Program-made: the position numbers and the translations under genes
Shown: piece after piece, positions 6,509-55,890 of the stretch
Layout of the letters: every line of letters begins with the position of its first letter
How positions within the stretch are numbered: position 1 is the stretch's first letter
The notes under the pieces: generated by a model
Databases searched by the model: none
The model's input: only the letters and a program-made list of their open reading frames with translations
What the model was told of the DNA's origin: nothing
From: Auanema rhodensis
Taxonomy: Eukaryota; Animalia; Nematoda
Direction: 5' to 3'
NCBI GenBank assembly: GCA_964057225.1
Contig: OZ059896.1
Location: 15,500,001 to 15,564,000, forward strand
DNA length: 64,000 nt

Positions 6509-6925
6509 CGTTCCATTTGGATTCCCAATGGTTCCAAGTTGAGAGATCCAAACAGACTATGAGACGATGAGTATGATTTTAAATATAAGTGTGTAATGTA
6601 AGGTGAAATAAGAAACAAAAGATGAAATATATAAAGGTTTATTGTTCGCATTATAATATAATTATACAAAGATTAAAGCTAAAGTTAAGAAAGAGAATAT
6701 AAAGAAGATAAAGAGAAAGTAAGATAATGAGATAAAGAGATGCCTGAGTCTTGAGGACTCAGGTTTATATATCCATACAACTCCTACTCAGTTTACACAA
6801 ATTGTTACAAAGCTTATAAAAAGTGCATCTAGAATATTCTCAGAATTGCTTAAAAACTATCTGCATTAGTTTAATAATAGCAGCTGCCATGGTCAGCTGC
6901 TTTCCTTTGAGATATGTATGTAACA
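6509..6925 (-). repeat. Element A 3' LTR (reads TGTTACA...AATGGAACG on the - strand)
   Basis: Direct repeat of 18432-18848; preceded on the - strand by a short purine tract, GGGGCA. Confidence 0.95.
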
Positions 6926-7129
6926 TGCCCCAACGGATACAAGTCAGCTGACCTCAGCTGTTATATGCAAATAATAATTAAGAGAGAAAAATAAAAAATA
7001 AAATAAAAAAAAAATAAAATGGCATGAGATAAAGCAAAATTTTTTTTTTTCTTTTCAACAAACTATTGATAAAGAGAAAAATTTTAAGAGATAGAATTTT
7101 ATAAATGATTTAAACCTTTCCTCTCTTCT

Positions 7130-7774
7130 TTAATCCGCCAGTTGGTCAATTTCCTGGATCATTTCCGTCATTGATGCTAGTCCAAGCAGCTCCATTGTTC
7201 TGATGGTTTGGCTAACTGCTTTTGCCTTACTTTTTGATGCGGACGTGTTGGTAGTCCTTTTTGTCAGTAGTTTTTCGATTACTACTGATAGGTCTTGCCC
7301 TATCTCTATCCACGATGCTTCTTCTTCGGTTCCGCTATTTCCTACAGCTTGTTGTGTCATCTGTGTTGTCCACGTCGGCATTGCTTTGTAGATGTCAGCT
7401 GTGGTCTGCGTTCTGGCGGGTTGTCCCAGCATTATGTGTCGGATTCTGTTCTCTTTCTGGCTGAGAGAACATCCTTCTGTCCATTTCTTTTGATGCTGGC
7501 GAAGCTCCTTCAGCTCGTTTTCCTTATAGTTTTTGGTTTTCTCCTCCAATAGTTCCATCATAAATAGGATGTGCTGTGTCTTCTTTTCCAATTTGCTCGT
7601 TTGGAGGCTTATTATTGGTCCTAAGTTGGGCTTCATGCAGTTGATAGGTAGAAGACCTTCACGAAGGTTTTCTACCTCTATCCATTCTTGTTCAATAGTG
7701 GTCGCTAGAGGGACCAGTGGTGTTGGAGTTGCGAGGAATGTAGAGAGTGTGACGTTGGCGAGAGAGGAGGTCAT
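7130..7774 (-). CDS. Accessory ORF downstream of pol in element A (214 aa from the ATG), function unknown
   Basis: Open frame between the pol stop and the 3' LTR in element sense, ATG at 7774, flanked by AT-rich sequence; charged, probably helical middle segment; no TM or signal peptide seen. Confidence 0.6.
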   Translation of the reverse strand: MTSSLANVTLSTFLATPTPLVPLATTIEQEWIEVENLREGLLPINCMKPNLGPIISLQTSKLEKKTQHILFMMELLEEKTKNYKENELKELRQHQKKWTEGCSLSQKENRIRHIMLGQPARTQTTADIYKAMPTWTTQMTQQAVGNSGTEEEASWIEIGQDLSVVIEKLLTKRTTNTSASKSKAKAVSQTIRTMELLGLASMTEMIQEIDQLAD

Positions 7775-7977
7775 TTTGAGTAAGAAAAGTGTTATTGAAT
7801 TTTTCTCTATCAAAATTTTCTCTTTATATAGTTTGTTTTTCAGTGATTGTTACAATTTGTTAAAATTAAAGGATAGAAATTAGAATTTCGGTGGTTTTTG
7901 ATCTATGTCTTATGTTTAATGTACTATACGAAAGAAAGAAAAATTATTTTTACAATTCTACGATTTTTGTTAGTTAA

Positions 7978-16900: not shown

Positions 16901-17223
16901 GGTTTAATGTTTGGGATAATTTTCTTTTCTAAGGTGTTTCTTTCGACTATGTCTGTTTTTTGTTTCTTCGTTTTTTCATGTGATTTGGGATTGGTGAATT
17001 GTTTTTGAATGCCGCGATGTCTTGGGGTATGTATTACCATTGACTTTGTTTTAATGCTTAACTTCGCTTGTTTTGCAGAGGGGGGAGAATATGTTGCGGG
17101 CGGTTGTCTTTTTCTTCTTATAATATTTGAAGTGGCAGCAGGGTCCAGCGGAGGTTTTGGACCAGTATTGGGCAGCATCGTTGGTATCCTGTAAGGAAAT
17201 TTGTTATATCCAACGTGTGCCAA
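7978..17223 (-). CDS. Gag-Env-Pol polyprotein of element A (3081 aa)
   Basis: Capsid motifs PRYDG, QLPTESVQSF and FTWGLRPEI. Signal peptide ~15465-15410; RSRR furin-type site 14664-14653; gB-like LQY...NICHVQ...INPT...ISARF...C; TM ~12483-12408. Protease WDTG ~12105; RT YLDD 10794-10783; RNaseH ESDGS/TDHRPL; integrase H-H-C-C, HMD, TDNG, VER, GPY. Confidence 0.93.
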   Translation of the reverse strand: MAHVGYNKFPYRIPTMLPNTGPKPPLDPAATSNIIRRKRQPPATYSPPSAKQAKLSIKTKSMVIHTPRHRGIQKQFTNPKSHEKTKKQKTDIVERNTLEKKIIPNIKPIPKNIASKGNPQNPPTNTIPNTINPINPLIATPRRSSTPTTQKSPTPALSSTTPAVSSSPPLRNSPSSIDHSTSGHSLSPSLPSQTNQANTFVAENKRINPRMDPMDEGAPLTQTSGRAPVPTPTIIPQPAAIPSAIRDIKAPRYDGKTPFNRYLLYLDEHFNATRTTMPERLQSIQLLLEDDRAREAYRKLTTEDKRLGWDHVKKRLSEMITPKKQRERAMHRLHGLKQLPTESVQSFATRCSNEAYSAMDMNNESELNMLRSTFTWGLRPEISEHVSRLDPPNFEEAYEMALREELFIQNRPTSFVNNIEKSFNNLNIRDSKDNNQYQRNESKDFKGTKPMYNGNGKPHNRYPDRYNNQYRPHQHQYRNHNSRFSQNKGSRQNYFDRSRNRSQERPYYRNRDQNYSGHNNRRQSNNHEQYPSQYNRSQYNNYRSRPRSTSNGPERYRERTQSPGVRFQVNNVTENEVPNNKRKSTPFLPLFITIIALIINTCSAETTYQLCTGNRGGIYVEPPSPTACRFIAPTNNHIQKTTAELFIQNLQPKEWEAWKCAIETYQLCIHDVFFIRDTNVSLAKVSPTTLQECSSAIKERIFNGTNLQREAPGLYGTPFPHTTITNGIWKQECEQRTRFIAERGHMTSLQDNTVLSEIFINDNGCTSDKGQCLTNNALIIWTPPSEKHSCSYTSLGSHEVFISEDTILIPGIQSAFILNNKTPEKEASSCLQKDIFTTNSGTLISFNSTSSLGRSRRHAITEYPKGFLTVHQYPSLRYSASKTGTILLYTTYIQRKRLDIHYNLNNITNMLPKYIAIFKYLGINFDVIKNRLIWHKYEDVNIAILHALGEAEIREATKIAIDNLSYKELTHKLSKRITIKDFKKILPTKTGDYYEIAKEIAYSLAEIPTTLATGETTPSLEEYLYQLMPPRKPRLTKTRNDLELYEQLAQAKIILNAINNPKKLHSKEEYEAEMKKWIKYEKELNLPPLQLPNYTVIFDGDDIFYGFRKRNPTNYSSTQEDSEKFYNHYLPLISTPGTRPFATTIRSTSTPLQTTTTTTTTTPKPTTIRNVITSTITPKTHISTTTRPQPTIPTSSSTTTTTTTTTTTTSTTARPRSTTTTTPTTTTTIFTTHRPTQSFSTPQSTFNITTNPITITSSQEYNRKESLTKSPPPRTTKRSITTTRSTPEEIASHIGKKAHVDYLKAKNDIVQNWNEHLHQQETQSHLQYATTNLEDDIIRTFTTNRNNICHVQNKQLLTWWAILQINPTIGMRTMLRRQDISARFINDKLIYVMPCTPIQITKTYRDHKVNSTCFLETPVETEHHGQLFILPGTRDLTPMAHAIPCGLTIKDPWKENDQWTNNNQSINVTSPAYIDELGSINLEHIKFNGSNIFNNLTESTFPMALAISYGSSLATLQATLPGRIKPVIKQRLIPNMNPVTLTAGAASSLLLSYEHAKEAITWKMFDFLSPIWEKIQTWTLRVLAIIGSIIITIGIITLATWIIKIYACSSRIPINNVKWETEYLQPLSTENTRTETSHPSPSAPYVDNHHNSCQLTLYDPSAPIPEHIYEAYFPTSMKKENINYIGGSQLPFVPISIHNHIFKALWDTGASASYMRESTFKQLPAATMVLKQTTAIVANKSKFSFMGYTRILITIGTTETEHKFYVAEDNYCPAPVLLGIDFMEALHQQGIYTSLRPLDKTIVIGTTHVPLARETSPWEHQTTKAYVVSLENKTLKPGETRTLTLEVHDPESYEQAFLDCKKPGNKLSFTPTIFTPTGYGVQIYATNICKQPLEIQMNQEIGIAEAIPKDNQEKYEGQYIPPEARWEEQLPYFPDNFINELDLSEACFSQIEQQQLKEIILLHKQAFLNEDRNIGLFLGPIEHSIPIMPGKTPSFKITYRIPLSQQEEVEKQIEEMLQQRIIEPSNSMTTSPVILVKKKDKTYRFVTDFRALNAITQKQVYVISNIQDILDLAAGARIFSNFDLVSGFFQIPLKKEDRHLTAFTTTSGTYQYCRMPMGLCGSPHTFQNAVRYLQSMVKCKLFVYLDDLLLISESTTAHLKDIEEVLEAVTQIGFKIKLKKCAFARKEVKFLGYIVGQEGIKPDPHKIKAIQDYPQPKSTTGVRAFMGVVNYFRRFIKNAAGIATPLYNLTRKDTPFKWTEEEEIAFNTLKKTLTQAPVLQAPIPKRPYVIESDGSMIAVGAVLLQAKDDQEPLHPIAFASRKLNKAERNYPPIEVEALALTFAVKQFRTYILGTATKIITDHRPLTSLMTRKDLIGRLAKFQIVLQEYDIEIIYRPGKLNSVCDALSRYFEDEINEAKPPAKKKNERKTTEDTIHQINTFTIADIRSVQNQSNWIKETMDKIKNNTAGRQLTDRYIVYNDVLYSKPKRSLQVPRTILPREEHIINPIMKKFHEDPTLGAHLGINKTMDSISRRFTWTGMQEDITNYINRCLACAKRKNNPHEATVEPMKNFPTSTKPWQRVHMDILGPLPRTEQENRYVLSIQDSFSKWIIAIPLIRQTSEEIISAIEKYLFYVFGPPVTIITDNGSNFISNDFTTMCSNFGTTHHTTMPYYKNANGQVERLHRTIEEALTAYVNDEQNDWDKILPKIIFTLNRLPNATTKTSPYECLFGQVARLPIDKNLETPEEQNITDQLKNLRDIQEKVKEKIATNEERMKQKYDQAHRTKERILDIGDRVFVQRANPSNKLQIRRDGPYRIVTIEGNNISITDQDGNIIKAHKNNIRYFPPDDNLISTRNNEEEEEEDQDIANEEEEEEEASWNNLDEWEQTNNTENNNNCYPTGSPDTLAQLLPITGNNRGINEEEIEHNSETPDDLATARRITNSNIQLENESTTIDRIQEDLRQLTPFSQEEGPNQNDIEDNNAKTYEKLRDQFKNENRKELFEDRNKNSPAIKNWNTTLAAALGIGNENSRPYHVKLQPKRKTQDEEIRSNGELELHGKADQSKKQQNKSPTQNKGEQVRNF

Positions 17224-18413
17224 AATAATTTTATATATAGAAAAACGTAAAGAATAATGTTGGGTTTGTGTGCGCGATTCTTATGAAGGTAGCTAGTCTT
17301 GCAAGTAATCTCTTTACCAATATAGCTCGTCCGGGTCTAACACAGGTTTGAAACTAGTGTGCCTTTTCGAAGGGACAAGTTCTATATTGTGAAAAAGGCA
17401 TGAAATGAAAGTTAATAGTTCGCCAGTCTTTTGGGACAAGGATACAAAATAGAATTTTCGCAATCATTTCATTTTCCCAGACCTCATTAACCTATCTGAG
17501 TCACAGGTATGTCAGCTGCCTTCTGCATCCTGCTCCCTGACTCTATGATGGCGAGACCACTCTTATTATTTATATCAATGTGGGGCAGATTTCAATTCAA
17601 AAATTCTCTAATTATTTCATGGGGCGTACGTCTTATCCTGAGTGTCGGCCTCCGCTCGAGTCTCTTGAGTGTCTGGCATTATTCTTAACGAGGGGGGGAT
17701 GGTTTTTGCGTATGAGTTAAAACTTATTGATTAATTTAATTATTTTTCGTTTTTTTTTTTTTTTCAGGTGCTAAGGTAATCGGAATTTGGATACGCTGCG
17801 CCTAATAAATATTTTTACTGTCGTGTTTAACACGGGATTTCTTGTTTATGAAATTACGGGGGGGGGGGGAAGGGGTGGGTTTATGAGAATACAGTGTAGT
17901 AGCATAAGAATAATAGTTTTATAAACGAACATAAAGAAAATAATGAAAATATGGTATGATAGGATGATTAAGATAGTATGATAAGATGAAGATTCAGATA
18001 ATATGATAAGATGATTAAGATTGAGATGTATAGAAGCAATATTCTTTTTTATTTCTTAATTCTAAATTAATTTTATAAAGAACTTAACTATTTTTGTTCA
18101 AAAAATGTGAAAATAAACTTATAATTCTTAGAAAAGTTAATTATTGAATTTGAATAATTTTCGTATATAGGATTTTGGATAGAGAGAATGATAAATGATA
18201 TAAGTACTCTTATGAATAATTGAAAATGATTTATGAATGGAAAACTGAGTTTTTTGTAAAGAGTTTTTGGATATAATTTTTAATAAAAAAGTTTTAGAGT
18301 TTTTAAGAAAATATTATAAGCTAACTTTAAGAGAGAGATAAGATTTTTAATTGAATAAGAGATGTAGACGGTAGCGCTTGAGTTCCTTTACGAGATCCTG
18401 TCCAAAAGGAAGG

Positions 18414-18431
18414 ATCTCGGTGGAACCTCCA
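18414..18431 (-). promoter_or_regulatory. Primer-binding site for tRNA-Gln
   Basis: TGGAGGTTCCACCGAGAT abuts the 5' LTR; it is the reverse complement of the tRNA-Gln 3' end ATCTCGGTGGAACCT-CCA. Confidence 0.9.
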
Positions 18432-18848
18432 CGTTCCATTTGGATTCCCAATGGTTCCAAGTTGAGAGATCCAAACAGACTATGAGACGATGAGTATGAT
18501 TTTAAATATAAGTGTGTAATGTAAGGTGAAATAAGAAACAAAAGATGAAATATATAAAGGTTTATTGTTCGTATTATAATATAATTATACAAAGATTAAA
18601 GCTAAAGTTAAGAAAGAGAATATAAAGAAGATAAAGAGAAAGTAAGATAATGAGATAAAGAGATGCCTGAGTCTTGAGGACTCAGGTTTATATATCCATA
18701 CAACTCCTACTCAGTTTACACAAATTGTTACAAAGCTTATAAAAAGTGCATCTAGAATATTCTCAGAATTGCTTAAAAACTATCTGCATTAGTTTAATAA
18801 TAGCAGCTGCCATGGTCAGCTGCTTTCCTTTGAGATATGTATGTAACA
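18432..18848 (-). repeat. Element A 5' LTR
   Basis: Direct repeat of 6509-6925; TATATAAA and AATAAA on the - strand. Confidence 0.95.
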
Positions 18849-43816: not shown

Positions 43817-44182
43817 CGTTCCATTCGGAGACTCTATATATGTAACTGCAGGGTTAGAGCCAGACCGACTAGAGGAATGAGGAATGGCACCGCCTTCCCT
43901 CATGCCCCTATTCGGGAGTTCGCCCCTTTGCAAGCCCATGGACGGTTTGCATCTAACTTAGTTAATCTTATATATTAGTCTTTGTCTTGTAAATGTAGTT
44001 TACTTTATCCTTGTGTTAATGTATTGTAATGATATTGTATTGTGTATAATAAACCTATATATTTCCTTATCTTATGTAATCCTTATGCTCTGTTTCCATA
44101 CCGCTACACTTATGGAATACTATACGCGTAGTTGAGCAGACTACAATGGTCTGTTCAATATACGTAGGAGCATAATGGAACG
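43817..44182 (+). repeat. Element D 5' LTR (CGTTCCATT...AATGGAACG)
   Basis: Direct repeat of 55525-55890 with a perfect 9-bp terminal inverted repeat. Confidence 0.95.
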
Positions 44183-44195
44183 TGGAGGTTCCACC
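44183..44195 (+). promoter_or_regulatory. Primer-binding site for tRNA-Gln
   Basis: TGGAGGTTCCACC abuts the LTR; same sequence as in element A. Confidence 0.88.
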
Positions 44196-45165
44196 TCGAA
44201 CTCATTTTTGTCGCAAAAACTCGCATAAAAAGTCCATATTTTGATATCTAAATTAAAACTTCCTCCACGGTTAGCAACATAATGAGGGCGCCAACTTGTA
44301 TAAGGTGCAGGTACAAGGGATCTCTCTTTTAGAGAGCTAGGACTACATAATTTTGAAATTTCACCCGCTGTCCCCACTCATAAAACCGTCTGAGTGTCCA
44401 CCCTTATAATACCGTATCCTGCACCGCTTCTCTTGCATTTTTTTTTGAGGACGTTTGGATCGAAATAGGGGACAATTTCACCAAACGAAATTTTGATTAC
44501 ATTATTATTTGGCAACGAGGAGTTAGAATGAAATTTTGAAAGCGCACAAAGTTTAATATTTTATTGTGGTCAGGACTAGAGATTTGAAAGTTAAATTCAG
44601 GCGTAAAAGAGCATGCTAACTAAATATTTTTGCGGGAGCCGTTATTCGGTTTTTATTTTTTTTTTGATTGTGAGAATAGACCACACTAGTCCGAAAAATC
44701 CTGGCACAAATTTTATTGCCTGTCAGGTCATTTTGGCGAAAGCACATGGGCTACGGATGTTTTCTTCTCCGTAGAATGTGTCACCTTCCTCAGCTCATTT
44801 TTGTTGCTAACATCATAAGATATTCCCACACACCTACCGTAGTATTCATATTGTAATATTCTATAAATTAGTAGAATGGTTTAAAGAAAAAAATTGCGTT
44901 TTATAAACGAGCTTTGGTCTCAGTCCATTAGTAAAATGAGCAATCTTTTTAAATATTCTCGGAATCTCATTAGCATGCCAAAATCATTCCGAAAAAGAAT
45001 CGCCCACGGCTTTTAATAATAACGTGCACATGAGCCATTTTCCCAAGGCGCACGCACTCCTTCTTTATTAATAAGCTCGACCAAAGTTTGTGTTATGGAA
45101 AAAAAAAAAAAAGAGAGAGAGAACAAATGAGTGAAATTAAGTATTTATTATATATGAAACAATTG

Positions 45166-45699
45166 TTAAAAGCCCCATTTAAAATGCAACTGTCTCACAA
45201 ATTCTATAGGCTGTGAGATGGGCTCATCGCTAGGCTCTAAATACTGCGAATACACCGAATCCGCAGAGGTCCTTAGCAATAAGCCCATAGGAGACTGTTC
45301 ATAAAATAAATAAATTTTAAACAAAATTTTAGACATATAATCATAAAAATCATGAGACTTATGCTCATACCAATTCCAAGGGGATGCGACCAGATTTGGG
45401 TTTTCATACCAATGCGCGCACAAGTCGGTGAGGCACCATCGCCGGATAGCTGCAACCTCATCCGCTATTTCCTGCATTAGGGAGAAGTTTACTAATCCCC
45501 TTCCCAGATAATGCATCTTTAAATCCTCAATAAACTAAAAATTCTTATTAAGATAACATGTTTCTTTGTTTTAACCAACCATCTTAATTATGTCTGGGTG
45601 CGGCCTATAAGCTAACACTTCGTCTTGATCATACAAGACGAGGTCAGCGTACAGCTTCCTCAAGACAAAAGTCATTCCCGATAGACCTTCATAAGCCAT
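45166..45699 (-). CDS. Putative antisense spliced gene in the leader of element D (exons 45699-45580 and 45534-45166; ~162 aa), function unknown
   Basis: A 40-codon ATG exon, then a 45-nt GTTGGT...TTTTAG intron containing a stop, spliced in frame to ORF 45516-45166. Confidence 0.55.
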
Positions 45700-46112
45700 T
45701 CTTTGATTTATTTTTTTTTTTCAGCTCTACAAATATAAAGATTCTTATGCATAAAAAGGGGACATAAAACGACTGAAAATCTCTCTCATACTTTCAAGAA
45801 TTCAATTAGAGTAAAGTATTAAGATTGAGGCTAGAAAGAGCGAAGACCAAAAAAAATTTATAATTGATGAACATCTGTGAAATAGAATAAAGAAAAGAGA
45901 ATACGGTAGATAGGCGGAGCCAGATCTCAGGCCAAGATTTTAAAACTCTTTCTCATCTAATAACGATTCTCGGCGAAAGACGCCACGTCTCAATCTTCAA
46001 ACGTTTCTTACTTTTCCTATAACCGACCCGAATTTCTTGTCACTCATTCAACGTCAACATCCCCCATATAACGAAACACTCGCGGTTTTTCCGAACCAAG
46101 AGTGATTCCAAA

Positions 46113-49100
46113 GTGGCACGAAGATACTCTTCGGCCGTCCCTGCTCTATACCCTTCTGAGTCCAGTGACGACATCGCAGTCGCCAGTCGAACCAGAAGCC
46201 GCACTCGACTCCTCAGTGTTCAGATTGAAGAGCCTGAACAAGAGGTAAAACCCAAAGTCGAGAAAACCTTCATTCCTCGAGAAGGCACGTATTCACCTCC
46301 GGACAACACCGAGGAGGACCCTGATTTCTATATTCAGGACTACAATATTCAAACTTCAGCTTCAACTCCAAAGGTACACTCTTTTAAAAGTAATAAAAAG
46401 ATTCAAAAAATTCAAAAACCAAAACAAATAACCTCTAATACTTCACCAGCCACTCCCCACCTAAACTTATCAACTTTATCAGTTAATACTGATAACGATC
46501 TTGCATCTTCTTTTGAACTAACTCTAACACCGCAGGCATTTTCCACTCCGATAGAAAACTCACAACTTAATAAAACCTCATCTCTCACTATTCGCAAATC
46601 ACCCTTATCAGTTATCACTGATAAGCTTGATTCGAAAAAGCTTGATTCTAAAAAAATTAATAAAAGAAAAACTAATACACCGCGTAGGCGCTCAACCTCT
46701 AATAATCCCGTAGAACCAAATCAGGAAATTACCGAAGTTTTGCCCTTATCACTAACTACTGATAAGTTCAAAAGTAAGAAATCTTTAACAGCTCGCTTAA
46801 TAAAAGTTTTGAATTTGTCTCCAGGGGAGGTAACAACAGAACAAGTTGATAACTCTCTTCACGTATCCTCCAACCCAACCCTTAATAAGTCAGATAGCGC
46901 TATACCCAGCTCAAGCGTATCAATACATTCGACGCCTCAGGCAACGAGTCGAATTATCAAACTCCCAGGGAAGCGGTTCTCCTCAGCCGCCCCTACCATT
47001 AGTTATCCAACATCTGGTAACTCGAAAAAGGGAGGTAAGAATTTAACGGCGAGAAGCTCAGGCAGTAAAGGGATTACGTCATCTCGCACATACCCTGAGG
47101 ATATACCAACCATGACGGAGACACCACGTCTTCCGGGAGCTGGTAAATCTACCATTGCGCACGCATTAAGCTCACCTTATTGCCCCATATACGACGGAAG
47201 TCGTAACTTTAGAGATTTCGTGGCAAAGTTTAATACCTTTTCTAACGCCTTAGGCTTAGTGATGCCCGAAAGACTAACTATTTTACCATTACTATTGAAA
47301 AATGATAGAGCAGAGGAAGCTTATTTAGAGCTACCTGACAAGGTCAGAACTGCTGGACCTTGGGTTACCCTAATAGAAGAGTTAACATCCAAGCTGTGTC
47401 CCGAATACAATCAAGACCCTGCCCTTATCACACTTCAAAACAGCACTCAAGGCGATTTATCAATTGATGGTTTTGCACAAACGTTAAGAAACCTCAGCTT
47501 AAATGCTTTCTCTAATAGTGATACTCATAAAGATCACATTCTGAGGTCCACATTTTTGAGAGGCTTGAAAAATACGATACGCCCAGGGGTAATTCGAGCA
47601 AAACCCAAAACTTTTGCTGAGGCTGTTGATAGTGCTCGCTGGGAGGAATCAATTGCAAACCAAGTAGCAGACCCTCAGGCGCTATTGGTTAACGCAATTG
47701 AAAGAACTTTCCCCCCGCGCAGAAACAATGGTGGGAGAGGTATGGCAAGAGGTTATCAATCTTTTAATAATAAAAATTATCAAAATTATAATAATTATAA
47801 CAATTATCATCCAAACTTTCAAAACAATCAAAATTATCATAAATTTTCAAAAAATCAAAAAGGCTGGAATTTCCAAAACCCATTTGCTAGGAACCGCAAT
47901 TTTGGTGACCGCGGTCGAAATTATCAGAATCAAAATCAAAATGGGTATCAAAGAAGCCATAATGCATCACAAAATCAAGAAATGAGCAATAATAGACAGA
48001 GAAATAACAGTACCTTTAGGGGAAATAACAACAATAGAGGCAGAGGTAGAGGCTCAAGAGTCAATAATTTGACTCTGATATCTCCTTTGACTTTAGCCGT
48101 AGCTTTATCAGTAATCTTATCACTGGTTACAACAGCTGAAGCATACCAGCTATGTACTAAAGCTACTGGAGGAGCCCTTCTCCGTCCCCCATCTCTCCGA
48201 AAATGCTTATTACCACCAATAAAGCATATCTTACGAACAAAAGTTCATCTTTATACAAGGAATCAAACGGCACATGAATGGGATGCATGGAGATGCTCCA
48301 AAGAAATTCATAAAATGTGTATCAGAGACCTTTTGTTCCTTAGAGATACCAATACAACGATAGCGAGAATTGAAAAGATACCAGCTGCAGAATGCAGACT
48401 GGCAGTGAGAGATAGAAGATGGAATTGGAGTGAATTAAAGAAGATCGACAGCATAACATATGCAACTGACGAGCCTTCCTTCTCGCCAGGCCGATCTTTT
48501 AATAATGAGCTATGTGAAGAGAAAGCCAGATTGGTTATCGAAAGAGGGGTTATGACACGGATGCCAGATGAAACTATAATCTCCAATTTAATACTAAATA
48601 CTGAAGGATGCTTAGCGCATCATGGAGAATGTGCATCAGATACCTCAATCATCATATGGGAGAAACAGCCTTATGAATATCGATGCAACTATATCGACAT
48701 GAGTGAATATGATGTGATAATTGGAGACGGCATTATTCTGTTACCAACCACTCAATCAGCCCTTGTAATCGATCAAAAAGAGATACCGAAGCAAATATCT
48801 TCTTGTTTTAAACAGCCAATCTTCCACACCACAACTGGCAATTACATTCTCTTACCACAGTACCCAAATGACACCAATATCCATGTTTTAATAGAGAGAG
48901 AATATAAGAAACTTCCGGCGAAAAGAGATAAAAGAGCAATTGCGGAATGCACGGTTGAATTAAACAAGGAGTGGATACAAAAACAGGAAGATTTTGAAAC
49001 TTTAATATTAAATATTTGTCCTTATCCTTTCTTACGACCGGTGATGAGTAATCCTGGTATTTATCAGATAATACCGCTTATAAAGGCCAGACGAGCTGTC

Positions 49101-52100
49101 AACCCTTCATATTCAATTATTGACTGGGTTTCAGCACATCCCGAGAAGTTTTATTTCTTCTTAAGAAGTCCCGTATCTGATAAATCCATACAACGTTTCC
49201 TTCAAACATACGAAATACACGACCCTGAGGAAGCAATACTTTATTTTCTTGCGCAAAAGGAACTGGCAGCAACCACTCGCGGCGCTATACGGTATTTAAC
49301 CTCACAACAATTATTAGAACAGATAGGTGACAGATTAACAGCACACGAATTTGACGAAAAACTGCTAGAAAAAGACGGATCCTACCGTGAAAGAGCCGAA
49401 AGCATAGCGATGGAGTTAGCTTATACACCGGTAATATTTGAAAACAATCTGTCGGTACCATCAAGGCAAGAGGTTTTAAAATCCTTTGTGAACATGCCGC
49501 CGATCCGACCAACTCTAACAACTGACAATGCTGATGAGCGTATAGTACTTAGAAACACTCTTTACTTATACCATAACTTGATGACATTGCGAGTAATAAG
49601 GCCAAATAAAACAGCAGCAGCCGTAGATGATGAAAAGTTCCGACAATTAACAATCAATGTGCCAGATACCAACAAATTATATCGAGATAAAGATTCTAAC
49701 TACGGTATATCGATAGGGCCCCACCCTCGCATTCAAAACCCAAGCGCAGATACACGCCAGCTACTTATAAAAACATTTTTACCACTGTTAGAGGATATTG
49801 AAACACCGCCTTATCTGACTAGAAGACTGTCATTAACGACAACAACGGACAAACCCGCTTCACTAGTTCAGGAGACAACTAAAAGCCATACGACTCGGAT
49901 TCCGACGACAACCACAGTTGAGACGACAACAGCCGCGATAACTACGACTCTCTCGCCAACAACATTAGCAACAGTCACTGACACGGCGTCACGAATCTTA
50001 AGGAAACAAAGAACATCATCTCCACCCGTAGAAACCAGAGAAATTCAGGCTCAGGCAACGTATACAGCGTCAAAAGTGAACAACGAAATACAATTCAACC
50101 TCAACGTATCTCGCAGAATAGCTCAAGATCATCTACAATATACAACAACACTCATACAAGAAGAGCTACAGAAACATTTCATGGAATCTTATGAATCCAT
50201 ATGTGAGATTCAAAATAGATACCTCGAGCTATGGCGTTCTATTTTACACATAGAACCTACAATAGCAATGAGGACTATTTTAGGAAGAGAGGATATTGCA
50301 GCCCGTTTCGTAGGCAGCGATATAGTTCATGTTCATATATGCCTACCTCTTCAACCTAAAGCTGTTTATCATAATCATAAGATCAATGATACATGCTATT
50401 TGGAAACACCAGTAATAACAGAAGATGAGAGATTATATTTTGCTGCTCCAGGATCAAGAGACTTATTAACACATGGAAAAGAGATAGATTGCGAACATGT
50501 ACCCACAGATGTATACTATCAAAATGGAGAATGGATAAATATAAATGGATCGGTTGAAGTAAAACCAATATCACTCTTTGATAAAGCGCAATACCACCAA
50601 TTAACACCTTTAAAGTTCACAGGCGCTAACTTATACACCAATTTATCATTGAGAGTTTACTCAATGTCAACAGCTATTGCATATGGAGCAAGTTTAGCAT
50701 CCATACGACAGAACCATGTTTTACATACTATTCACAACGATCCAAAAATTACGTCCGCCTTTAATCTTTTGAAAAAGGGCAGTGACTATATCTCTAAAGC
50801 AGCTGAGTTCACAACTTCCGCCTGGACTAGCGTAAAGCAATTTCTAATAGGATCAATTGAGAGAACACTCATCTTCATAGGATCAATGGTTACGATTGCC
50901 GCAGTATTAATAATTCTTTTCGTTGTTGCTAAATTTTGGTTCTTCAGAGCCACTCCACTAACCGTAATGCATGTCCACGAAATAGATAATGAGCCCCCAA
51001 GCTATGAAGAAACATTGGAACTTGTAAGCCGCCCAGACCAACAGATGCCAGATAACATCATGAAGCAATACTATCCTGCTTTAGTAACATTTATTCCAAT
51101 CGCAATACCATTTGTTGCTTCTATTGTATCAGCGGAAACAAAGTTACCATTAATATATATATCAGTTGAAGATAAACTGATTTTAGCTTTATGGGATTCA
51201 GGCTCATCAGTGTCATATGTTAGGCTCTCCACCCTCAAATATCTGAACATGGCCGAAAATGTCAAGAAGAGACATTTAGTAGCGATGGCAGCCAACAAGT
51301 CCACTTTCACATTTTATGGAAAGATAAATCTTGTAATTGAAATTGCCGGTTACGAGATCGAACACACCTTTTTGGTCTCAAACGATCATGACTGTCCTGC
51401 TCCCGCTTTAATTGGACTAGATTTCATGAAAGCGCTTGACAGCGAAAACATCGACGTCAGCCTTAAACCATCCAAGAAGAGGTTGGAGATTGGAAACAAT
51501 GCCATCCCATTAATAGGAAACGAATCTATTAAGCATACGGAGATAACTGTGAATATCATTAATTTAAGAACAAAAACATTAAAGCCTGATGAAGAGGCAC
51601 CTATCCCAATAAAGACAGATAAACCACTAGAATCTAACGAAGTGGTTGTCTTAGGGGATAGTGGAAGCGCATTAAAATCATTATATCCAACTGCGTTTCG
51701 TGATACCAGTGGAGTATATGTTATGTTCCGTAACAATACCGATGAAACAATAGCTATGGAAGCTAATTCAGTCATCGGACAGGCAATAATTGGAGAAATT
51801 CCGGCTTGTGAACCCTTTAAGCATAAGCCAATTCTACCATATGTTCCGCCAGAGGCCGATTGGGAGAGTAAACTACCATATTTTCCAAGAGACTTCATAA
51901 AAGATCTTGATCTAGAGAATGCTGATCTCACGAAAGAAGAAAAACATGAGCTTACAAAAATAATTGAAAGCCATCGTGAGGCATTTCTTAACGAGGACAG
52001 GAAAATAGGCTTATTTAAAGGTCCTATAGAGCATACCATACCATTGAGAACAGATATGGATATGCCAAAGCCGAGAATAACACGTATTCCCTTAGGAAAA

Positions 52101-54818
52101 CAGGAAGAAATTGAAAAACAAGTCAAAGAAATGCTTGAGCAAGGCATAATAGAGCCTTCTACATCTCTATTTAATAGCCCTGTAGTACTAGTTAAGAAGA
52201 AAGATGACACGTATAGGTTTGTGACAGATTTTCGAGCTTTAAATAATGTCACACGCAAGCAAACTTATGTCATTCCAAGCATTTCTGACATAGTTGATTT
52301 GGCAGCAGGCGCCCAATTTTTCTCAAACTTCGATTTAGTGTCAGGATTTTTTCAAATATCCTTGAGAAAATCAGATCGACCACTAACAGCATTTACGACC
52401 ACATCCGGCACATACCAGTACAAACGGATGCCGATGGGCCTTTGTGGAGCCCCTCATACCTTTCAAACAGCAGTAAGGTATTTGCAAAGTAAATGTTCTT
52501 GTAAACTATTTGTTTATTTGGACGATCTATTAGTTATATCTGATACAAGAGAACAACATCTCAAAGATATCGATGATTTACTGCAAGCAGTAGAAGAATT
52601 GGGAATGAAGATAAAGCTTAAGAAATGCGCTTTTGCTCAACCAGAAGTGAAATTTCTAGGACTTATTGTAGGACGTCAAGGTATAAAACCTGACCCTCAA
52701 AAAGTCGCCGCCATACAAGATTATCCGGCACCAAAGAATGCAACAGGTGTACGAGCATTCTTGGGAATGGTTGGATTCTTTCGCAAATTCATGAAAGATT
52801 TTGCACGTATCGCAAGCCCTTTATACGATCTGACAAAGGCAGATACTGAATTCAAATGGGAAAACAAACATCAAGAAGCTTTAGACCTCCTTAAAAGAAG
52901 TTTAATACAGGCACCCGTTTTAAGCCCACCTAAATCGGACCGCTTGTTTATAGTTGAAAGCGACGGTAGTAACATCGCCATAGGTGCTGTATTATTACAA
53001 CCGGAAGATCCAAAACAACCTCTGAAAAATCTACACCCTATCGCATTTGCAAGCAGAAAACTAGTTAAAGCCGAACGTAACTACGCACCAATCGAGATAG
53101 AAGCATTAGGCCTTGTATATGCATTAAATCAATTCCGTACATACATTCTTGGAACTCATACTATATGTATTACGGACCATCGACCTCTTACCAGCTTAAT
53201 GACACGCAGAGACTTATTTGGTCGTCTTGCGAAGTTCCAGCTGGTCATCCAAGAATATGATATTGAAATAAAATATCGCGCAGGCCAATTAAATAAAGTA
53301 TGCGATGCTCTATCTCGATATATAGGTGAAGAAGCTAACGATGCTAAGCCGGAAACAAAGAAGAAGAAAATGGAAGAAATTCACATTAACGCCATAAATA
53401 CACCAACAATAAAGGAAATTCAACTAAGCACCCCTTGGATTAAACGGACGATAGCGGAGATTGAATATAGAGCACAAAAGAACATGACAGCTAATGACAG
53501 ATATTGTGTCATAAATGACTTGCTCTATACAAAACCAACAGACAAAAAGCCACAACCCGCTATCGTAATACCACAAGAACACCCCATAATTGAGGAAATA
53601 ATCAAAGTTTTTCATGAGGATCCTACAATTGCAGCACATCAAGGAATTATTAAAACAAAAGAAGCAATTCTAAGAAGATTCTATTGGACAAATATGCAGA
53701 ACGACATTACTATATTCATCAAGAACTGCATTAAATGTGCTCAAAGAAAAAAAGATCCACATTCCATGACGGTACAACCAATAGGTCATTTTGAGATACC
53801 AAGCAAGCCATTTGAACGAGTCCACATGGACGTAATGGGACCATTTCCCCCTTCAAAAAGAAACTGTACCTACGTCATTACCATGCAAGACGCATTTACA
53901 AAATGGTCAACAACAATTGCTGTACCACAAATAACAACGGAAATCACAATTGATCGATTTCTAAGACATTTCGTTTACATTTTTGGACCACCCCATCGCT
54001 TGATCACCGATAGAGGTTCAAACTTTGTATCTAAAAAGTTCGAAGAAATGTGTACTAAACTTGGAATCAAACATGAACCAACACTACCACACCAAAAGAA
54101 CTCAAATGGACAAGTGGAAAGACTTCACCGAACCCTCGAAGAAGGATTAACCCACTACTTAAAAGAGGACCTTAGTGACTGGGATACTGTATTACCAAAA
54201 ATCACTTTTGCTATTAACAATATTCAGCACGCGACTACAGGGATTGCGCCATACATTGCATTATTCGGTAAAGAATGCAGAATGTCAATGGACGCTGAAT
54301 TACCAGAAACGATCACCAAAATTCAAGAAATTTCTGAAGAATTACTCCAAAGAAGACCAGATATGGACAAGAGAGACGAAATAATAAAGAACCGCATAGC
54401 TAAAAATCAAGAAAATGCGAAAAAGAAGAAAGATAGAACGCAAAGAGCACACCATAGAGACATTCAACCGGGCGACATGGTGATGACGACTATAAAATCA
54501 CACCAAATCGGCCAAAAGCTTCGGAAAAGCTATGATGGACCATGCGAAGTCATCAACGTAGAAGGATCAAAAGTTCAAATCAGAAATTCATCAGGAAAAC
54601 TACAAGATATCCACAAAGATAACTTGAAAATCTTCTCTCCTGCTTCACAAAACATCTCTTACAACACTCGCGCAAGGTTTCGAGAAAGTCAAGCAGAAGA
54701 AGATAGCGACATCGAAATAATAGAAGTGATCAACAGGAACAACAAGGATAGCATAGATACAGAGCCAGAAGATGAAAATGAAGACGAAATATGGCTTCCG
54801 AGGAATGAAGAAGAATAA
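46113..54818 (+). CDS. Gag-Env-Pol polyprotein of element D (2901 aa; first ATG at 47112)
   Basis: Capsid PIYDG and FLRGLKNTI. Signal peptide ~48075-48143; KRDKR at 48921-48935; gB-like helix from 50130; TM ~50868-50945. Protease WDSG ~51195; RT YLDD 52515-52526; RNaseH; integrase HHCC and DDE. Confidence 0.93.
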   Translation: MARRYSSAVPALYPSESSDDIAVASRTRSRTRLLSVQIEEPEQEVKPKVEKTFIPREGTYSPPDNTEEDPDFYIQDYNIQTSASTPKVHSFKSNKKIQKIQKPKQITSNTSPATPHLNLSTLSVNTDNDLASSFELTLTPQAFSTPIENSQLNKTSSLTIRKSPLSVITDKLDSKKLDSKKINKRKTNTPRRRSTSNNPVEPNQEITEVLPLSLTTDKFKSKKSLTARLIKVLNLSPGEVTTEQVDNSLHVSSNPTLNKSDSAIPSSSVSIHSTPQATSRIIKLPGKRFSSAAPTISYPTSGNSKKGGKNLTARSSGSKGITSSRTYPEDIPTMTETPRLPGAGKSTIAHALSSPYCPIYDGSRNFRDFVAKFNTFSNALGLVMPERLTILPLLLKNDRAEEAYLELPDKVRTAGPWVTLIEELTSKLCPEYNQDPALITLQNSTQGDLSIDGFAQTLRNLSLNAFSNSDTHKDHILRSTFLRGLKNTIRPGVIRAKPKTFAEAVDSARWEESIANQVADPQALLVNAIERTFPPRRNNGGRGMARGYQSFNNKNYQNYNNYNNYHPNFQNNQNYHKFSKNQKGWNFQNPFARNRNFGDRGRNYQNQNQNGYQRSHNASQNQEMSNNRQRNNSTFRGNNNNRGRGRGSRVNNLTLISPLTLAVALSVILSLVTTAEAYQLCTKATGGALLRPPSLRKCLLPPIKHILRTKVHLYTRNQTAHEWDAWRCSKEIHKMCIRDLLFLRDTNTTIARIEKIPAAECRLAVRDRRWNWSELKKIDSITYATDEPSFSPGRSFNNELCEEKARLVIERGVMTRMPDETIISNLILNTEGCLAHHGECASDTSIIIWEKQPYEYRCNYIDMSEYDVIIGDGIILLPTTQSALVIDQKEIPKQISSCFKQPIFHTTTGNYILLPQYPNDTNIHVLIEREYKKLPAKRDKRAIAECTVELNKEWIQKQEDFETLILNICPYPFLRPVMSNPGIYQIIPLIKARRAVNPSYSIIDWVSAHPEKFYFFLRSPVSDKSIQRFLQTYEIHDPEEAILYFLAQKELAATTRGAIRYLTSQQLLEQIGDRLTAHEFDEKLLEKDGSYRERAESIAMELAYTPVIFENNLSVPSRQEVLKSFVNMPPIRPTLTTDNADERIVLRNTLYLYHNLMTLRVIRPNKTAAAVDDEKFRQLTINVPDTNKLYRDKDSNYGISIGPHPRIQNPSADTRQLLIKTFLPLLEDIETPPYLTRRLSLTTTTDKPASLVQETTKSHTTRIPTTTTVETTTAAITTTLSPTTLATVTDTASRILRKQRTSSPPVETREIQAQATYTASKVNNEIQFNLNVSRRIAQDHLQYTTTLIQEELQKHFMESYESICEIQNRYLELWRSILHIEPTIAMRTILGREDIAARFVGSDIVHVHICLPLQPKAVYHNHKINDTCYLETPVITEDERLYFAAPGSRDLLTHGKEIDCEHVPTDVYYQNGEWININGSVEVKPISLFDKAQYHQLTPLKFTGANLYTNLSLRVYSMSTAIAYGASLASIRQNHVLHTIHNDPKITSAFNLLKKGSDYISKAAEFTTSAWTSVKQFLIGSIERTLIFIGSMVTIAAVLIILFVVAKFWFFRATPLTVMHVHEIDNEPPSYEETLELVSRPDQQMPDNIMKQYYPALVTFIPIAIPFVASIVSAETKLPLIYISVEDKLILALWDSGSSVSYVRLSTLKYLNMAENVKKRHLVAMAANKSTFTFYGKINLVIEIAGYEIEHTFLVSNDHDCPAPALIGLDFMKALDSENIDVSLKPSKKRLEIGNNAIPLIGNESIKHTEITVNIINLRTKTLKPDEEAPIPIKTDKPLESNEVVVLGDSGSALKSLYPTAFRDTSGVYVMFRNNTDETIAMEANSVIGQAIIGEIPACEPFKHKPILPYVPPEADWESKLPYFPRDFIKDLDLENADLTKEEKHELTKIIESHREAFLNEDRKIGLFKGPIEHTIPLRTDMDMPKPRITRIPLGKQEEIEKQVKEMLEQGIIEPSTSLFNSPVVLVKKKDDTYRFVTDFRALNNVTRKQTYVIPSISDIVDLAAGAQFFSNFDLVSGFFQISLRKSDRPLTAFTTTSGTYQYKRMPMGLCGAPHTFQTAVRYLQSKCSCKLFVYLDDLLVISDTREQHLKDIDDLLQAVEELGMKIKLKKCAFAQPEVKFLGLIVGRQGIKPDPQKVAAIQDYPAPKNATGVRAFLGMVGFFRKFMKDFARIASPLYDLTKADTEFKWENKHQEALDLLKRSLIQAPVLSPPKSDRLFIVESDGSNIAIGAVLLQPEDPKQPLKNLHPIAFASRKLVKAERNYAPIEIEALGLVYALNQFRTYILGTHTICITDHRPLTSLMTRRDLFGRLAKFQLVIQEYDIEIKYRAGQLNKVCDALSRYIGEEANDAKPETKKKKMEEIHINAINTPTIKEIQLSTPWIKRTIAEIEYRAQKNMTANDRYCVINDLLYTKPTDKKPQPAIVIPQEHPIIEEIIKVFHEDPTIAAHQGIIKTKEAILRRFYWTNMQNDITIFIKNCIKCAQRKKDPHSMTVQPIGHFEIPSKPFERVHMDVMGPFPPSKRNCTYVITMQDAFTKWSTTIAVPQITTEITIDRFLRHFVYIFGPPHRLITDRGSNFVSKKFEEMCTKLGIKHEPTLPHQKNSNGQVERLHRTLEEGLTHYLKEDLSDWDTVLPKITFAINNIQHATTGIAPYIALFGKECRMSMDAELPETITKIQEISEELLQRRPDMDKRDEIIKNRIAKNQENAKKKKDRTQRAHHRDIQPGDMVMTTIKSHQIGQKLRKSYDGPCEVINVEGSKVQIRNSSGKLQDIHKDNLKIFSPASQNISYNTRARFRESQAEEDSDIEIIEVINRNNKDSIDTEPEDENEDEIWLPRNEEE

Positions 54819-55513
54819 CAACAAGATAATGCTACGTTATTTAAATTATTGTAACAAAATAACGATGAATTAAAAAAAAAAAAAAAAAAATTAATGCTAA
54901 ATAACATTCAAAATAAAAATAGCATTTAATAGAGATTGAGAAAGGAAAAATAAGGCAAATTCTAAACGAGGAGATGTTATGACTAATGGTTCCAAGTTAC
55001 CGTAATCCTATGCGGACTAGAGGACATTTTGACAACCATCCGAGCTCCATGTGCCTCTCCAAATAAGATGAGATGAACACTGGTAGGCGTATCAACCACA
55101 ATTTCATCTTAAGTGGTAGTCTCCATTAGTAATCAAGGATTCACTCTGGGAGACATATGGAGACACATTATTAAATCATAATCTCGGTTCAATTTAGAAA
55201 TGAGTACTTCTTGAGACCATTAGTCAAAATAATAACATATTCCCATTCATTACTAGCCCCTTTATTCTACAATCTCTATTAGGAAATGCTTGAATATTAA
55301 GATAATTAATTTATGAAATTAATAATATTCTAATTCATCGTCCCTTCATATTATATTGAACCCTTCTTATAAATTATTGTAATTTTGTTTGTATACTAAC
55401 TAAAACTCTATCATACTATAGTTATTGTGAAGCTAAAACAATTGAACTCTAAAACTCAGTTACATATAAGCCCAAATTTTTGTTTAAAATATCGCGAGGT
55501 CGCGACAATCTTT

Positions 55514-55524
55514 GAAAAAGGGCA
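55514..55524 (+). promoter_or_regulatory. Polypurine tract of element D
   Basis: GAAAAAGGGCA immediately before the 3' LTR. Confidence 0.75.
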
Positions 55525-55890
55525 CGTTCCATTCGGAGACTCTATATATGTAACTGCAGGGTTAGAGCCAGACCGACTAGAGGAATGAGGAATGGCACCG
55601 CCTTCCCTCATGCCCCTATTCGGGAGTTCGCCCCTTTGCAAGCCCATGGACGGTTTGCATCTAACTTAGTTAATCTTATATATTAGTCTTTGTCTTGTAA
55701 ATGTAGTTTACTTTATCCTTGTGTTAATGTATTGTAATGATATTGTATTGTGTATAATAAACCTATATATTTCCTTATCTTATGTAATCCTTATGCTCTG
55801 TTTCCATACCGCTACACTTATGGAATACTATACGCGTAGTTGAGCAGACTACAATGGTCTGTTCAATATACGTAGGAGCATAATGGAACG
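55525..55890 (+). repeat. Element D 3' LTR
   Basis: Direct repeat of 43817-44182. Confidence 0.95.

What the first reader, a model, noticed from the sequence alone, without database searches (positions are those of the whole stretch)
46113..54818. Gypsy elements with a gag-ENV-pol layout: a class III-like viral glycoprotein embedded between Gag and protease in a single ORF (elements D and A)
Seen: in two divergent, intact elements ~930-1020 aa lie in frame between capsid/NC and the protease. This insert has a signal peptide, a Cys-rich ectodomain (YQLC, W.AW.C, EC..A, GC....G.C, IIW), a basic site (KRDKR in D, RSRR in A), a Thr-rich tract, the motif HLQY-x17-IC..Q....W..IL.I.PTI.MRT.L.R.DI.ARF....C...TC.LETPV, and a TM. 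Known: that motif mirrors the central helix of herpesvirus gB and chuvirus G (LQF.Y...WC..Q...INP...ARxxGD..C). Retroviruses, errantiviruses and env-bearing BEL elements (Tas, Cer, Atlas) all place env 3' of pol. Inference: this is an enveloped Metaviridae lineage with an independent env capture. Its topology would resemble a flavivirus polyprotein: Gag cytosolic, Env luminal, and Pol made 1:1 on the cytosolic tail of Env. That would give a new way to package Pol with no frameshift. I know of no description of this layout but could not search for one.
Basis: partly seen in the sequence, partly recalled or inferred. Interest (0 to 1): 0.95.

Follow-up and report, generated by a model that had tools for sequence, protein, structure and literature searches.

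The report
Nematode retrovirus-like elements with gag-env-pol order
Two young Ty3/gypsy retrovirus-like elements in a 5S rRNA/U4 snRNA gene array do carry a herpesvirus-gB-like fusion glycoprotein in frame between Gag and protease, but this gag-env-pol layout was already described in nematodes in 2022 and 2023-2026, so they are new members of a known kind.

Summary
ORF 46113-54818 (+, element D) and ORF 7978-17223 (-, element A) are uninterrupted reading frames of 2901 and 3081 codons. Each reads capsid-like Gag, signal peptide, a roughly 900-aa ectodomain, a transmembrane helix, then protease, RT, RNase H and integrase. The ectodomain is a class III fusion glycoprotein on three lines of evidence: Pfam Monjiviricetes_fusion above its cut-off, a family profile hitting solved herpesvirus gB at E 4.5e-12, and an AlphaFold model whose 50 listed PDB matches are all gB. 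Both elements have LTRs (366/366 and 416/417 identical), 4-bp target duplications and the same primer-binding-like site, so both are recent insertions. About 50 of the 151 retrieved relatives carry env followed by PR or RT in one protein; two checked at DNA level are continuous ORFs.

The novelty claim fails. Chary and Hayashi (eLife 2026; bioRxiv 2023) report gB-type GAG-ENV-POL elements in Nematoda, Bryozoa and Platyhelminthes, and cite Sacco et al. 2022 for nematodes.

Still untested: the polyprotein and ER-topology model, a ~290-aa helical insert with no fold match, and the absence of any ATG in the first 333 codons of D.

The parts
43817..55890 (+). Element D, complete LTR element (12,074 bp) inserted in the 5S/U4 array; 4-bp target duplication AAAT at 43813-43816 and 55891-55894
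43817..44182 (+). D 5' LTR, 366 bp, identical to the 3' LTR
44183..44195 (+). D primer-binding-like site TGGAGGTTCCACC directly after the LTR; the same 13 nt follow the 5' LTR of A
44196..46022 (+). D leader of about 1.8 kb; no + strand ORF longer than 53 aa
46113..54818 (+). D gag-env-PR-RT-RNH-IN reading frame, 2901 codons as listed; the frame is open from 46023; first ATG at codon 334 (47112)
47112..47732 (+). D capsid-like Gag domain (aa 334-540)
   Evidence: homologous to the Retrotrans_gag region of A; gag columns of profile A1 hit PNMA2 capsid structures at 2.5e-7
47733..48062 (+). D basic, N/Q/R/G-rich, Cys-free region where a nucleocapsid would sit (aa 541-650); no zinc knuckle
48063..48143 (+). 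D internal signal-peptide-like leader (aa 651-677; hydrophobic core 654-672; AEA|YQLC)
   Evidence: a comparable segment precedes env in 24 of 29 fused relatives that include the env N-terminal half
48144..48908 (+). D env N-terminal beta-rich half (aa 678-932), Cys-rich, modelled at pLDDT of about 90
48951..48965 (+). D furin-like basic site KRDKR (aa 947-951)
   Evidence: an R-x-[KR]-R motif occurs in this linker in 40 of 78 relatives
48966..49817 (+). D alpha-helical insert of about 285 aa in the env linker, shared with A and a few close relatives, no known fold
49830..49991 (+). D Thr-rich, mucin-like tract (aa 1240-1293), modelled as disordered
50028..50252 (+). D long central helix (aa 1306-1380) that contains HLQY; aligns with gB domain III
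50286..50558 (+). D beta-rich domain after the central helix (aa 1392-1482), pLDDT above 90, within the Monjiviricetes_fusion match
50871..50927 (+). D transmembrane anchor (aa 1587-1605)
50928..51161 (+). D tail between the TM and the protease (aa 1606-1683), including a second weaker hydrophobic stretch at aa 1656-1674
51162..51431 (+). D aspartyl protease (aa 1684-1773, DSG motif)
52191..53258 (+). D reverse transcriptase and RNase H (aa 2027-2382)
53586..54092 (+). D integrase zinc-binding and core domains (aa 2492-2660)
55525..55890 (+). D 3' LTR
6509..18848 (-). Element A, complete LTR element (12,340 bp); LTRs at 6509-6925 and 18432-18848 (417 bp, 1 mismatch); target duplication ATAC at 6505-6508 and 18849-18852
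7978..17223 (-). A gag-env-PR-RT-RNH-IN reading frame, 3081 codons, first ATG at codon 16
12424..15468 (-). A env, from the leader to the TM (aa 586-1600), homologous to D env
9208..12156 (-). A protease to integrase core (aa 1690-2672)

Best explanation
D and A are two divergent, recently inserted endogenous retroviruses of the Ty3/gypsy (Metaviridae) type. They belong to the already described nematode group whose genes run gag-env-pol. Their env is a class III fusion glycoprotein related to mononegavirus/chuvirus G and herpesvirus gB.

Shown here: the domain order, the frame continuity, the leader and TM pair, the class III fold, the LTRs, target duplications and primer-binding-like site, and the recurrence of the layout in relatives.

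Inferred mechanism:
1. The full-length RNA is translated as one polyprotein.
2. The internal leader, emerging after Gag, takes the ribosome to the ER. Host signal peptidase cuts Gag (cytosolic) from Env (luminal).
3. The single TM stops transfer, so protease, RT and integrase are made on the cytosolic tail of Env and are freed by the element's own protease.
4. A furin-like site in the env linker may split Env into two chains.
For: - Pfam order and scores.
- Hydrophobic leader and TM in both elements.
- D and A align end to end at 27-45% identity with no stop.
- A profile of env relatives hits solved gB chains down to 4.5e-12.
- AlphaFold model: mean pLDDT 71.7, a beta-rich N-terminal half, a 75-residue helix and a beta-rich domain.
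- All 50 listed Foldseek PDB matches are gB, with E down to 7e-13 and probability 1.0.
- Best BFVD matches are rhabdo-like, nyavirus and chu-like G proteins and gB, with E down to 6.7e-17.
- 314 representative clusters are related to D env.
- About 50 of the 151 retrieved relatives have env followed by PR or RT in one protein. Most have one leader before env and one strong TM after it.
- Named relatives come from Auanema sp. JU1783 and Caenorhabditis brenneri, japonica, remanei and nigoni.
- The C. nigoni protein and an ENA protein are continuous ORFs of 7977 and 9951 nt.
- LTRs, target duplications and a shared PBS-like site.
- A has no Met between about aa 451 and its leader at aa 586, so a separate env start next to the leader is not conserved.
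- Prior description of the GAG-ENV-POL gB-type group in nematodes (PMC13524379).
Against: - There is no transcript or protein evidence. Splicing, which nematodes and retroviruses both use, was not tested.
- D has no ATG in the first 333 codons of its open frame.
- D and a few relatives have a second hydrophobic stretch just before the protease. If it spans the membrane, Pol would end up on the luminal side.
- Global TM-scores to gB are low (0.17-0.30), because the model is a monomer with a large insert and disordered tracts.
- Leader cleavage was judged by rule of thumb only.
- The host species is not identified; 'nematode' rests on the nearest relatives.
Confidence: 0.8

Rival explanations
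1. The layout is the same, but expression is by splicing. Env would be made from a subgenomic or trans-spliced message, and Gag-Pol from a message with env removed. The frame continuity would then be tolerated rather than used.
For: - Retroviruses make Env from spliced RNA, and nematodes trans-splice widely (established knowledge).
- D has a Met at aa 624, 30 residues before its leader core.
- The 1.8-kb leader of D contains a strong nematode-type acceptor-like run of T followed by CAG near 45712-45723.
- D lacks an ATG at the head of its frame, which an upstream exon could supply.
Against: - A has no Met within about 135 residues upstream of its leader.
- Both junctions (gag-env and env-PR) stay open in two elements that are only 27-45% identical, and in about 50 relatives. 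Open junctions would not be needed if env were always spliced out or read separately.
- No tool here predicts introns.
Confidence: 0.25
2. The env region is a structural relic or has another role such as tethering or receptor blocking. It would no longer act as a fusogen, and the elements would spread only within cells.
For: - Fusion activity is untested.
- The linker carries a large insert of unknown fold and a mucin-like tract that are absent from most relatives.
Against: - Cysteines and a tryptophan are nearly invariant across 35 sequences that are about 20% identical to D.
- The core domains are modelled with high confidence.
- The leader and TM are kept across the family.
- The LTRs are identical or nearly so, which indicates recent activity of elements that carry a full-length env.
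Confidence: 0.12
3. It is an artefact: an assembly chimera, or an unrelated glycoprotein-bearing sequence nested inside an ordinary gypsy element.
For: The region is a highly repetitive tandem array, where assemblies can fail.
Against: - Two different elements on opposite strands have the same order.
- Both have clean 4-bp target duplications and matched LTRs.
- The same order appears in independent genomes and metagenomes.
- No repeats or extra ends flank env inside D.
Confidence: 0.02

Closest known systems
Nematode endogenous retroviruses with env before pol (Sacco, Lau, Godinez-Vidal and Kaloshian 2022, J Gen Virol 103:001739). The paper is not held; it is known here through its title and its citation in PMC13524379.
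   Same: A metavirus backbone, a glycoprotein related to RNA-virus G proteins, env placed before pol, and a nematode host. From memory, unverified: the abstract speaks of a continuous gag-env-pro-pol ORF.
   Different: I could not compare sequences, so I cannot say whether D and A fall in a described clade. The helical insert in the env linker and the 5S/U4 array location may or may not be reported there.
GAG-ENV-POL 'errantiviruses' with HSV/gB-type ENV in Nematoda, Bryozoa and Platyhelminthes (Chary and Hayashi, eLife 2026, PMC13524379; bioRxiv 2023)
   Same: Ty3/gypsy pol; a gB-type five-domain env flanked by a signal peptide or TM and a TM; a furin site that is not always kept; multiple intact young copies; gag-env-pol order.
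   Different: That paper treats GAG, ENV and POL as ORFs. The words polyprotein, fused and in-frame do not occur in its text, so it does not discuss single-polyprotein translation or membrane topology. Here all three lie in one frame.
Insect errantiviruses (gypsy, ZAM, Idefix)
   Same: Ty3/gypsy pol with an acquired viral fusion glycoprotein.
   Different: From established knowledge, their env is 3' of pol, is made from a spliced message, and is of the baculovirus F type (class I), not class III. The elements here do not meet those features.
BEL/Pao elements with env fused after pol (Tas-like or chuvirus-G-bearing with class III env; Cer7-13 and Atlas virus with phlebovirus Gc)
   Same: The same class III env family is found in BEL/Pao polyproteins (P0056, P0099, P0126). 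A BEL/Pao element with a Gc-type env sits in this same window.
   Different: They belong to a different superfamily (Peptidase_A17, DUF1759, DUF5641), and their env is at the C-terminal end, after integrase.
Herpesvirus gB and Monjiviricetes/chuvirus G (class III fusogens)
   Same: Fold and profile-level sequence similarity over the central helix and the following domain.
   Different: About 10% identity; a roughly 400-aa linker with a helical insert and a mucin-like tract; encoded inside a retroelement polyprotein.
Flavivirus-type polyprotein processing
   Same: By analogy only: an internal signal sequence after a cytosolic capsid protein, with host signal peptidase making the first cut.
   Different: No relatedness. 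Nothing about processing has been shown for these elements.

Membership tests
Ty3/gypsy LTR retroelement (Metaviridae) | Pol order protease - RT - RNase H - integrase | tested here: met
   Pfam order in D and A
Ty3/gypsy LTR retroelement (Metaviridae) | Long terminal repeats with a short target-site duplication, and a primer-binding site next to the 5' LTR | tested here: met
   D: 366-bp LTRs, 100% identical, duplication AAAT. A: 417-bp LTRs, 1 mismatch, duplication ATAC. The shared site TGGAGGTTCCACC starts with TGG. The LTR ends of D read CG...CG rather than the usual TG...CA.
Ty3/gypsy LTR retroelement (Metaviridae) | Gag with a capsid domain and a CCHC zinc-knuckle nucleocapsid | tested here: inconclusive
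   The capsid-like domain is weakly recognised: Retrotrans_gag 2.3e-4 in A, below its cut-off, and PNMA2 capsid hits at 2.5e-7 from the family profile. No CCHC motif is present; a basic, Cys-free, low-complexity region takes its place.
Class III viral fusion glycoprotein (gB / rhabdovirus G / gp64 type) | Characteristic multi-domain fold with a long central helix | tested here: met
   All 50 listed Foldseek PDB matches are gB, E down to 7e-13. BFVD: mononegavirus, chu-like G and gB. A 75-residue helix contains HLQY. PF24664 scores above its cut-off. The profile hits gB structures at 4.5e-12.
Class III viral fusion glycoprotein (gB / rhabdovirus G / gp64 type) | Type I membrane topology: N-terminal signal and a C-terminal TM anchor | tested here: met
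   Hydropathy in D and A and in relatives. This is heuristic only; no SignalP or DeepTMHMM was available.
Class III viral fusion glycoprotein (gB / rhabdovirus G / gp64 type) | Trimer with internal bipartite fusion loops, and membrane-fusion activity | not testable with these tools
   Only a monomer model could be made. The fusion loops were not mapped.
Nematode GAG-ENV-POL gB-type ERVs (Sacco 2022; Chary and Hayashi 2026) | env lies between gag and pol, and env is of the gB type | tested here: met
   family definition taken from PMC13524379
Nematode GAG-ENV-POL gB-type ERVs (Sacco 2022; Chary and Hayashi 2026) | Nematode host, and pol clustering with the described clades | tested here: inconclusive
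   The nearest named relatives are from Auanema sp. JU1783 (47% identity) and Caenorhabditis species. The host of the window was not identified, and no RT tree against the published elements could be made.
Errantivirus in the strict (insect) sense | env 3' of pol and of the baculovirus F type | tested here: not met
   Here env is 5' of the protease and is class III.

The most novel reading that the evidence does not exclude
Gag, Env and Pol of these elements really are made as one ER-threaded polyprotein. A host signal peptidase, not the viral protease, would separate Gag from Env, and Pol would be delivered to assembly sites tethered to the cytoplasmic tail of Env. The lineage-specific ~285-aa helical module in the env linker would be a new ectodomain function, such as receptor binding or shielding. 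The one held paper on the group does not address either point, and the evidence here does not exclude them.
Probability: 0.4. Interest if true: 0.55.

Novelty: new member of a known kind. Interest (0 to 1): 0.3.

Why it matters
The window gives two complete, very young copies of the gag-env-pol nematode ERV type. They are 27-45% identical to each other, so they form a natural pair for asking which features are constrained: the leader, the single TM, the cysteines and the open junctions. They also raise a question that the one paper I could read on the group does not treat: how a retroelement expresses a luminal glycoprotein from the middle of a cytosolic polyprotein. As a discovery of a layout, however, the finding is not new.

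Tried and rejected
1. Exact look-up of the D protein in public assemblies to name the host: not on record.
2. The word-indexed protein search over the env region gave only one hit, from Auanema sp. JU1783. The exhaustive representative search was far more informative.
3. A fold search with the helical insert alone found nothing significant in the PDB. The best E was 0.3, and the model is only moderate, with pLDDT 66 from 5 sequences.
4. The N-terminal 333 codons of D showed no significant match against A or any retrieved relative.
5. Sacco et al. 2022 is not held and is cited by only one held paper. No supplementary tables of the eLife paper are held, so I could not check whether D or A is already catalogued.
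6. A literature search for retroelements in nematode 5S arrays found nothing relevant.
7. I considered shared target-site specificity within the array unit and rejected it. The four inserts lie at different unit positions.
8. dN/dS was not attempted, because the closest relative is under 60% identical in protein.
9. The Pfam RdRP_1 match in D (E 0.005, below its cut-off, over the RT) is treated as cross-talk between polymerase families.
Full report
SETTING

The window is a tandem array of units about 490 bp long, with 416- and 472-bp variants. Each unit holds a 5S rRNA gene and a U4 snRNA gene on the + strand (Rfam, 102 matches). Four blocks interrupt the array, at roughly 6509-18848, 26880-31725, 32652-40979 and 43817-55890. 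The finding concerns the last block (element D) and the first (element A).

THE OBSERVATION

ORF 46113-54818 (+) has 2901 codons without a stop. Its Pfam domains run in this order:
- Monjiviricetes_fusion, aa 1341-1481 (E 5.6e-15, 54.8 bits, cut-off 27)
- Herpesvirus Glycoprotein_B, aa 1338-1424 (6.3e-9, below cut-off)
- aspartyl protease, aa 1684-1773
- RVT_1, aa 2027-2185
- RNase H, aa 2249-2382
- integrase, aa 2492-2660

ORF 7978-17223 (-), with 3081 codons, has the same order plus a weak Retrotrans_gag match at aa 290-379.

Hydropathy shows in D a leader at aa 654-672 followed by AEA|YQLC, and a strong TM at aa 1587-1605. In A the leader is at aa 586-604, ending CSA|E, and the TM is at aa 1582-1600. 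D and A align over nearly their whole length, at 27% identity for gag plus the N-terminal env half and 45% from the C-terminal env half to integrase.

1. The frame of D is open from 46023, and the chance of no stop in 363 codons at that base composition is about 3e-9. Yet it has no ATG until listed codon 334, just before the capsid-like domain (chance of no ATG about 0.01). The stretch resembles nothing retrieved.
2. Neither element has a zinc knuckle. A basic, Cys-free, N/Q/R/G-rich region stands in its place.
3. D has a second, weaker hydrophobic stretch at aa 1656-1674, just before the protease.

IS THE INSERT A CLASS III GLYCOPROTEIN?

An exhaustive search with D aa 673-1610 found 314 representative clusters at E <= 1e-3, of which 25 are at <= 1e-30. 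I aligned 35 of these sequences (A1). A profile built from that alignment hits solved herpesvirus gB chains at E down to 4.5e-12. Some alignments span about 300 profile positions. It also hits rhabdovirus G weakly, at 0.006-0.02.

An AlphaFold model made with A1 has mean pLDDT 71.7:
- residues 1-260 are beta-rich, at pLDDT of about 90;
- residues 634-708 form one 75-residue helix that holds HLQY (D aa 1340-1343);
- residues 720-810 are a beta-rich domain at pLDDT above 90;
- a helical TM closes the model;
- the Thr-rich tract is disordered.

All 50 listed Foldseek matches in the PDB are gB, with E down to 7.2e-13 and probability 1.0. Global TM-scores are low (0.17-0.30), as expected for a monomer with a large insert. 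In the viral library the best matches are G proteins of rhabdo-like, nya- and chu-like viruses and gB, with E down to 6.7e-17. Sequence, profile and fold all agree, so the class III assignment stands. Trimer formation, fusion loops and fusion activity were not tested.

ARE THESE REAL, COMPLETE ELEMENTS?

- D: LTRs at 43817-44182 and 55525-55890, 366/366 identical, with target duplication AAAT.
- A: LTRs at 6509-6925 and 18432-18848, 416/417 identical, with target duplication ATAC.
- Both have TGGAGGTTCCACC directly after the 5' LTR.
- D lies 37 bp after a U4 gene and 98 bp before a 5S gene. A lies 31 bp before a 5S gene.
- Nothing inside D suggests a nested insertion around env.

IS THE LAYOUT A FAMILY TRAIT?

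I used the separate domains of D as probes against the 151 retrieved relatives. About 50 have env followed by PR or RT in the same protein. About 20 have gag and env together. Several show the full gag-env-PR-RT-IN order. In these, a hydrophobic segment precedes env in 24 of the 29 that include the N-terminal env half. One strong TM follows env in nearly all. A second weak stretch just before the protease recurs in a minority.

Named relatives come from Auanema sp. JU1783 (the best, at 47% identity) and from Caenorhabditis brenneri, japonica, remanei and nigoni. The C. nigoni protein is a continuous 7977-nt ORF in the chromosome, and an ENA metagenome relative is a continuous 9951-nt ORF. A few relatives carry the same env family after integrase. 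The three I scanned are BEL/Pao elements.

WHAT IS KNOWN

Chary and Hayashi (eLife 2026, PMC13524379; bioRxiv 10.1101/2023.10.26.564294) state that errantivirus-like Ty3/gypsy elements of Nematoda, Bryozoa and Platyhelminthes carry only HSV/gB-type ENV, arranged GAG-ENV-POL. They report that these elements do not form one clade, and that the ectodomain is flanked by a signal peptide and a TM, or by two TMs, with a furin site that is not always kept. They credit Sacco et al. [quoted passage not shown]

The Sacco paper is not held. From memory only, its abstract describes a continuous gag-env-pro-pol ORF. The eLife text does not contain the words polyprotein, fused or in-frame, so the translation and topology question is not treated there.

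HOW IT MOST LIKELY WORKS

These steps are inferred, not shown. Translation of the full-length RNA would give Gag first. The internal leader would then engage the ER, and signal peptidase would cut after the leader. The ectodomain would be luminal and glycosylated. The TM would stop transfer, so protease, RT and integrase would be cytosolic on the tail of Env and released by the protease. A furin-like site (KRDKR in D, RSRR in A) is present in this linker in 40 of 78 relatives and may split Env.

Points in favour:
- Both junctions are open in divergent elements and in relatives.
- The one-leader, one-TM pattern recurs.
- A has no Met near its leader.

Points against:
- There are no expression data.
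- The splicing alternative was not tested.
- D has a second hydrophobic stretch before the protease.

The claim that this is a new way to package Pol without a frameshift goes too far. I recall that single-ORF Ty3/gypsy elements are already known.

WHAT REMAINS ODD

The linker between the two conserved env halves is about 400 aa in D and A, against a median of 86 aa in 78 relatives. It holds an alpha-helical module of about 285 aa, shared only with A and a few close relatives. The module is modelled at moderate confidence and has no PDB fold match, with best E 0.3. A mucin-like Thr-rich tract follows it.

VERDICT

The novelty is not: these are new members of a known kind. I used the consensus lines that the alignment tool printed for nothing. 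Neither D nor A has a stop or frameshift in its reading frame.

Noticed in passing
window 1-6508, 18849-26879, 31726-32651, 40980-43816, 55891-64000: The host sequence is a tandem array in which each unit of about 490 bp (with 416- and 472-bp variants) carries a 5S rRNA gene and a U4 snRNA gene on the same strand. Rfam gives 102 matches above gathering score. I do not recall seeing a 5S-U4 linkage described, and it could help to identify the host.
   Followed up: partly
window 32652-40979 (ORF 33711-40595, +): A BEL/Pao element whose single 2294-codon ORF ends in a phlebovirus Gc-like class II glycoprotein (Phlebovirus_G2, 2.5e-46). Its order is gag-pol-env, as in Cer7-13 and Atlas virus. Two retroelement superfamilies with two different captured fusogen classes therefore sit within 15 kb of each other in the same array.
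   Followed up: partly
window 26880-31725 (ORF 27508-29586, +): This block holds only a BEL/Pao gag-like ORF (DUF1759). Its two flanks fall at different phases of the array unit (about position 406 on the left, 69 on the right), so it looks like a truncated element with loss of array sequence. I did not analyse it for breaks.
   Followed up: no
window 6509-55890: Four env-bearing LTR elements lie in 64 kb of the 5S/U4 array, and two of them have (near-)identical LTRs. The insertion points differ within the unit, so there is no shared target site. Whether the array is preferred or merely tolerant cannot be judged from one window.
   Followed up: partly
window 46023-47111: The first 363 codons of the open frame of D are kept free of stops (chance about 3e-9) but contain no ATG. 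They are Ser/Thr/Lys-rich and match nothing retrieved. The true start of D (an upstream exon, a non-AUG start, or a lost start) is unexplained.
   Followed up: partly
window 48966-49817 (D) and about 13804-14682 (A, - strand): A helical module of about 285 aa is inserted in the env linker after the furin-like site. No PDB fold match was found (best E 0.3). It occurs only in D, A and a few close relatives.
   Followed up: yes
window 43817-44195 and 18419-18848: D and A share the same 13-nt primer-binding-like site and the same LTR 3' end (AATGGAACG), although their proteins are only 27-45% identical. The LTR of D starts and ends with CG rather than TG...CA.
   Followed up: partly
window 51386-52258 (- strand): A 290-codon antisense ORF with a TTG start lies opposite the protease/RT region of D. 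It is probably a chance ORF in AT-rich coding sequence.
   Followed up: no
window 22564-22931: A local 181-bp duplication inside the array gives one 597-bp unit.
   Followed up: no
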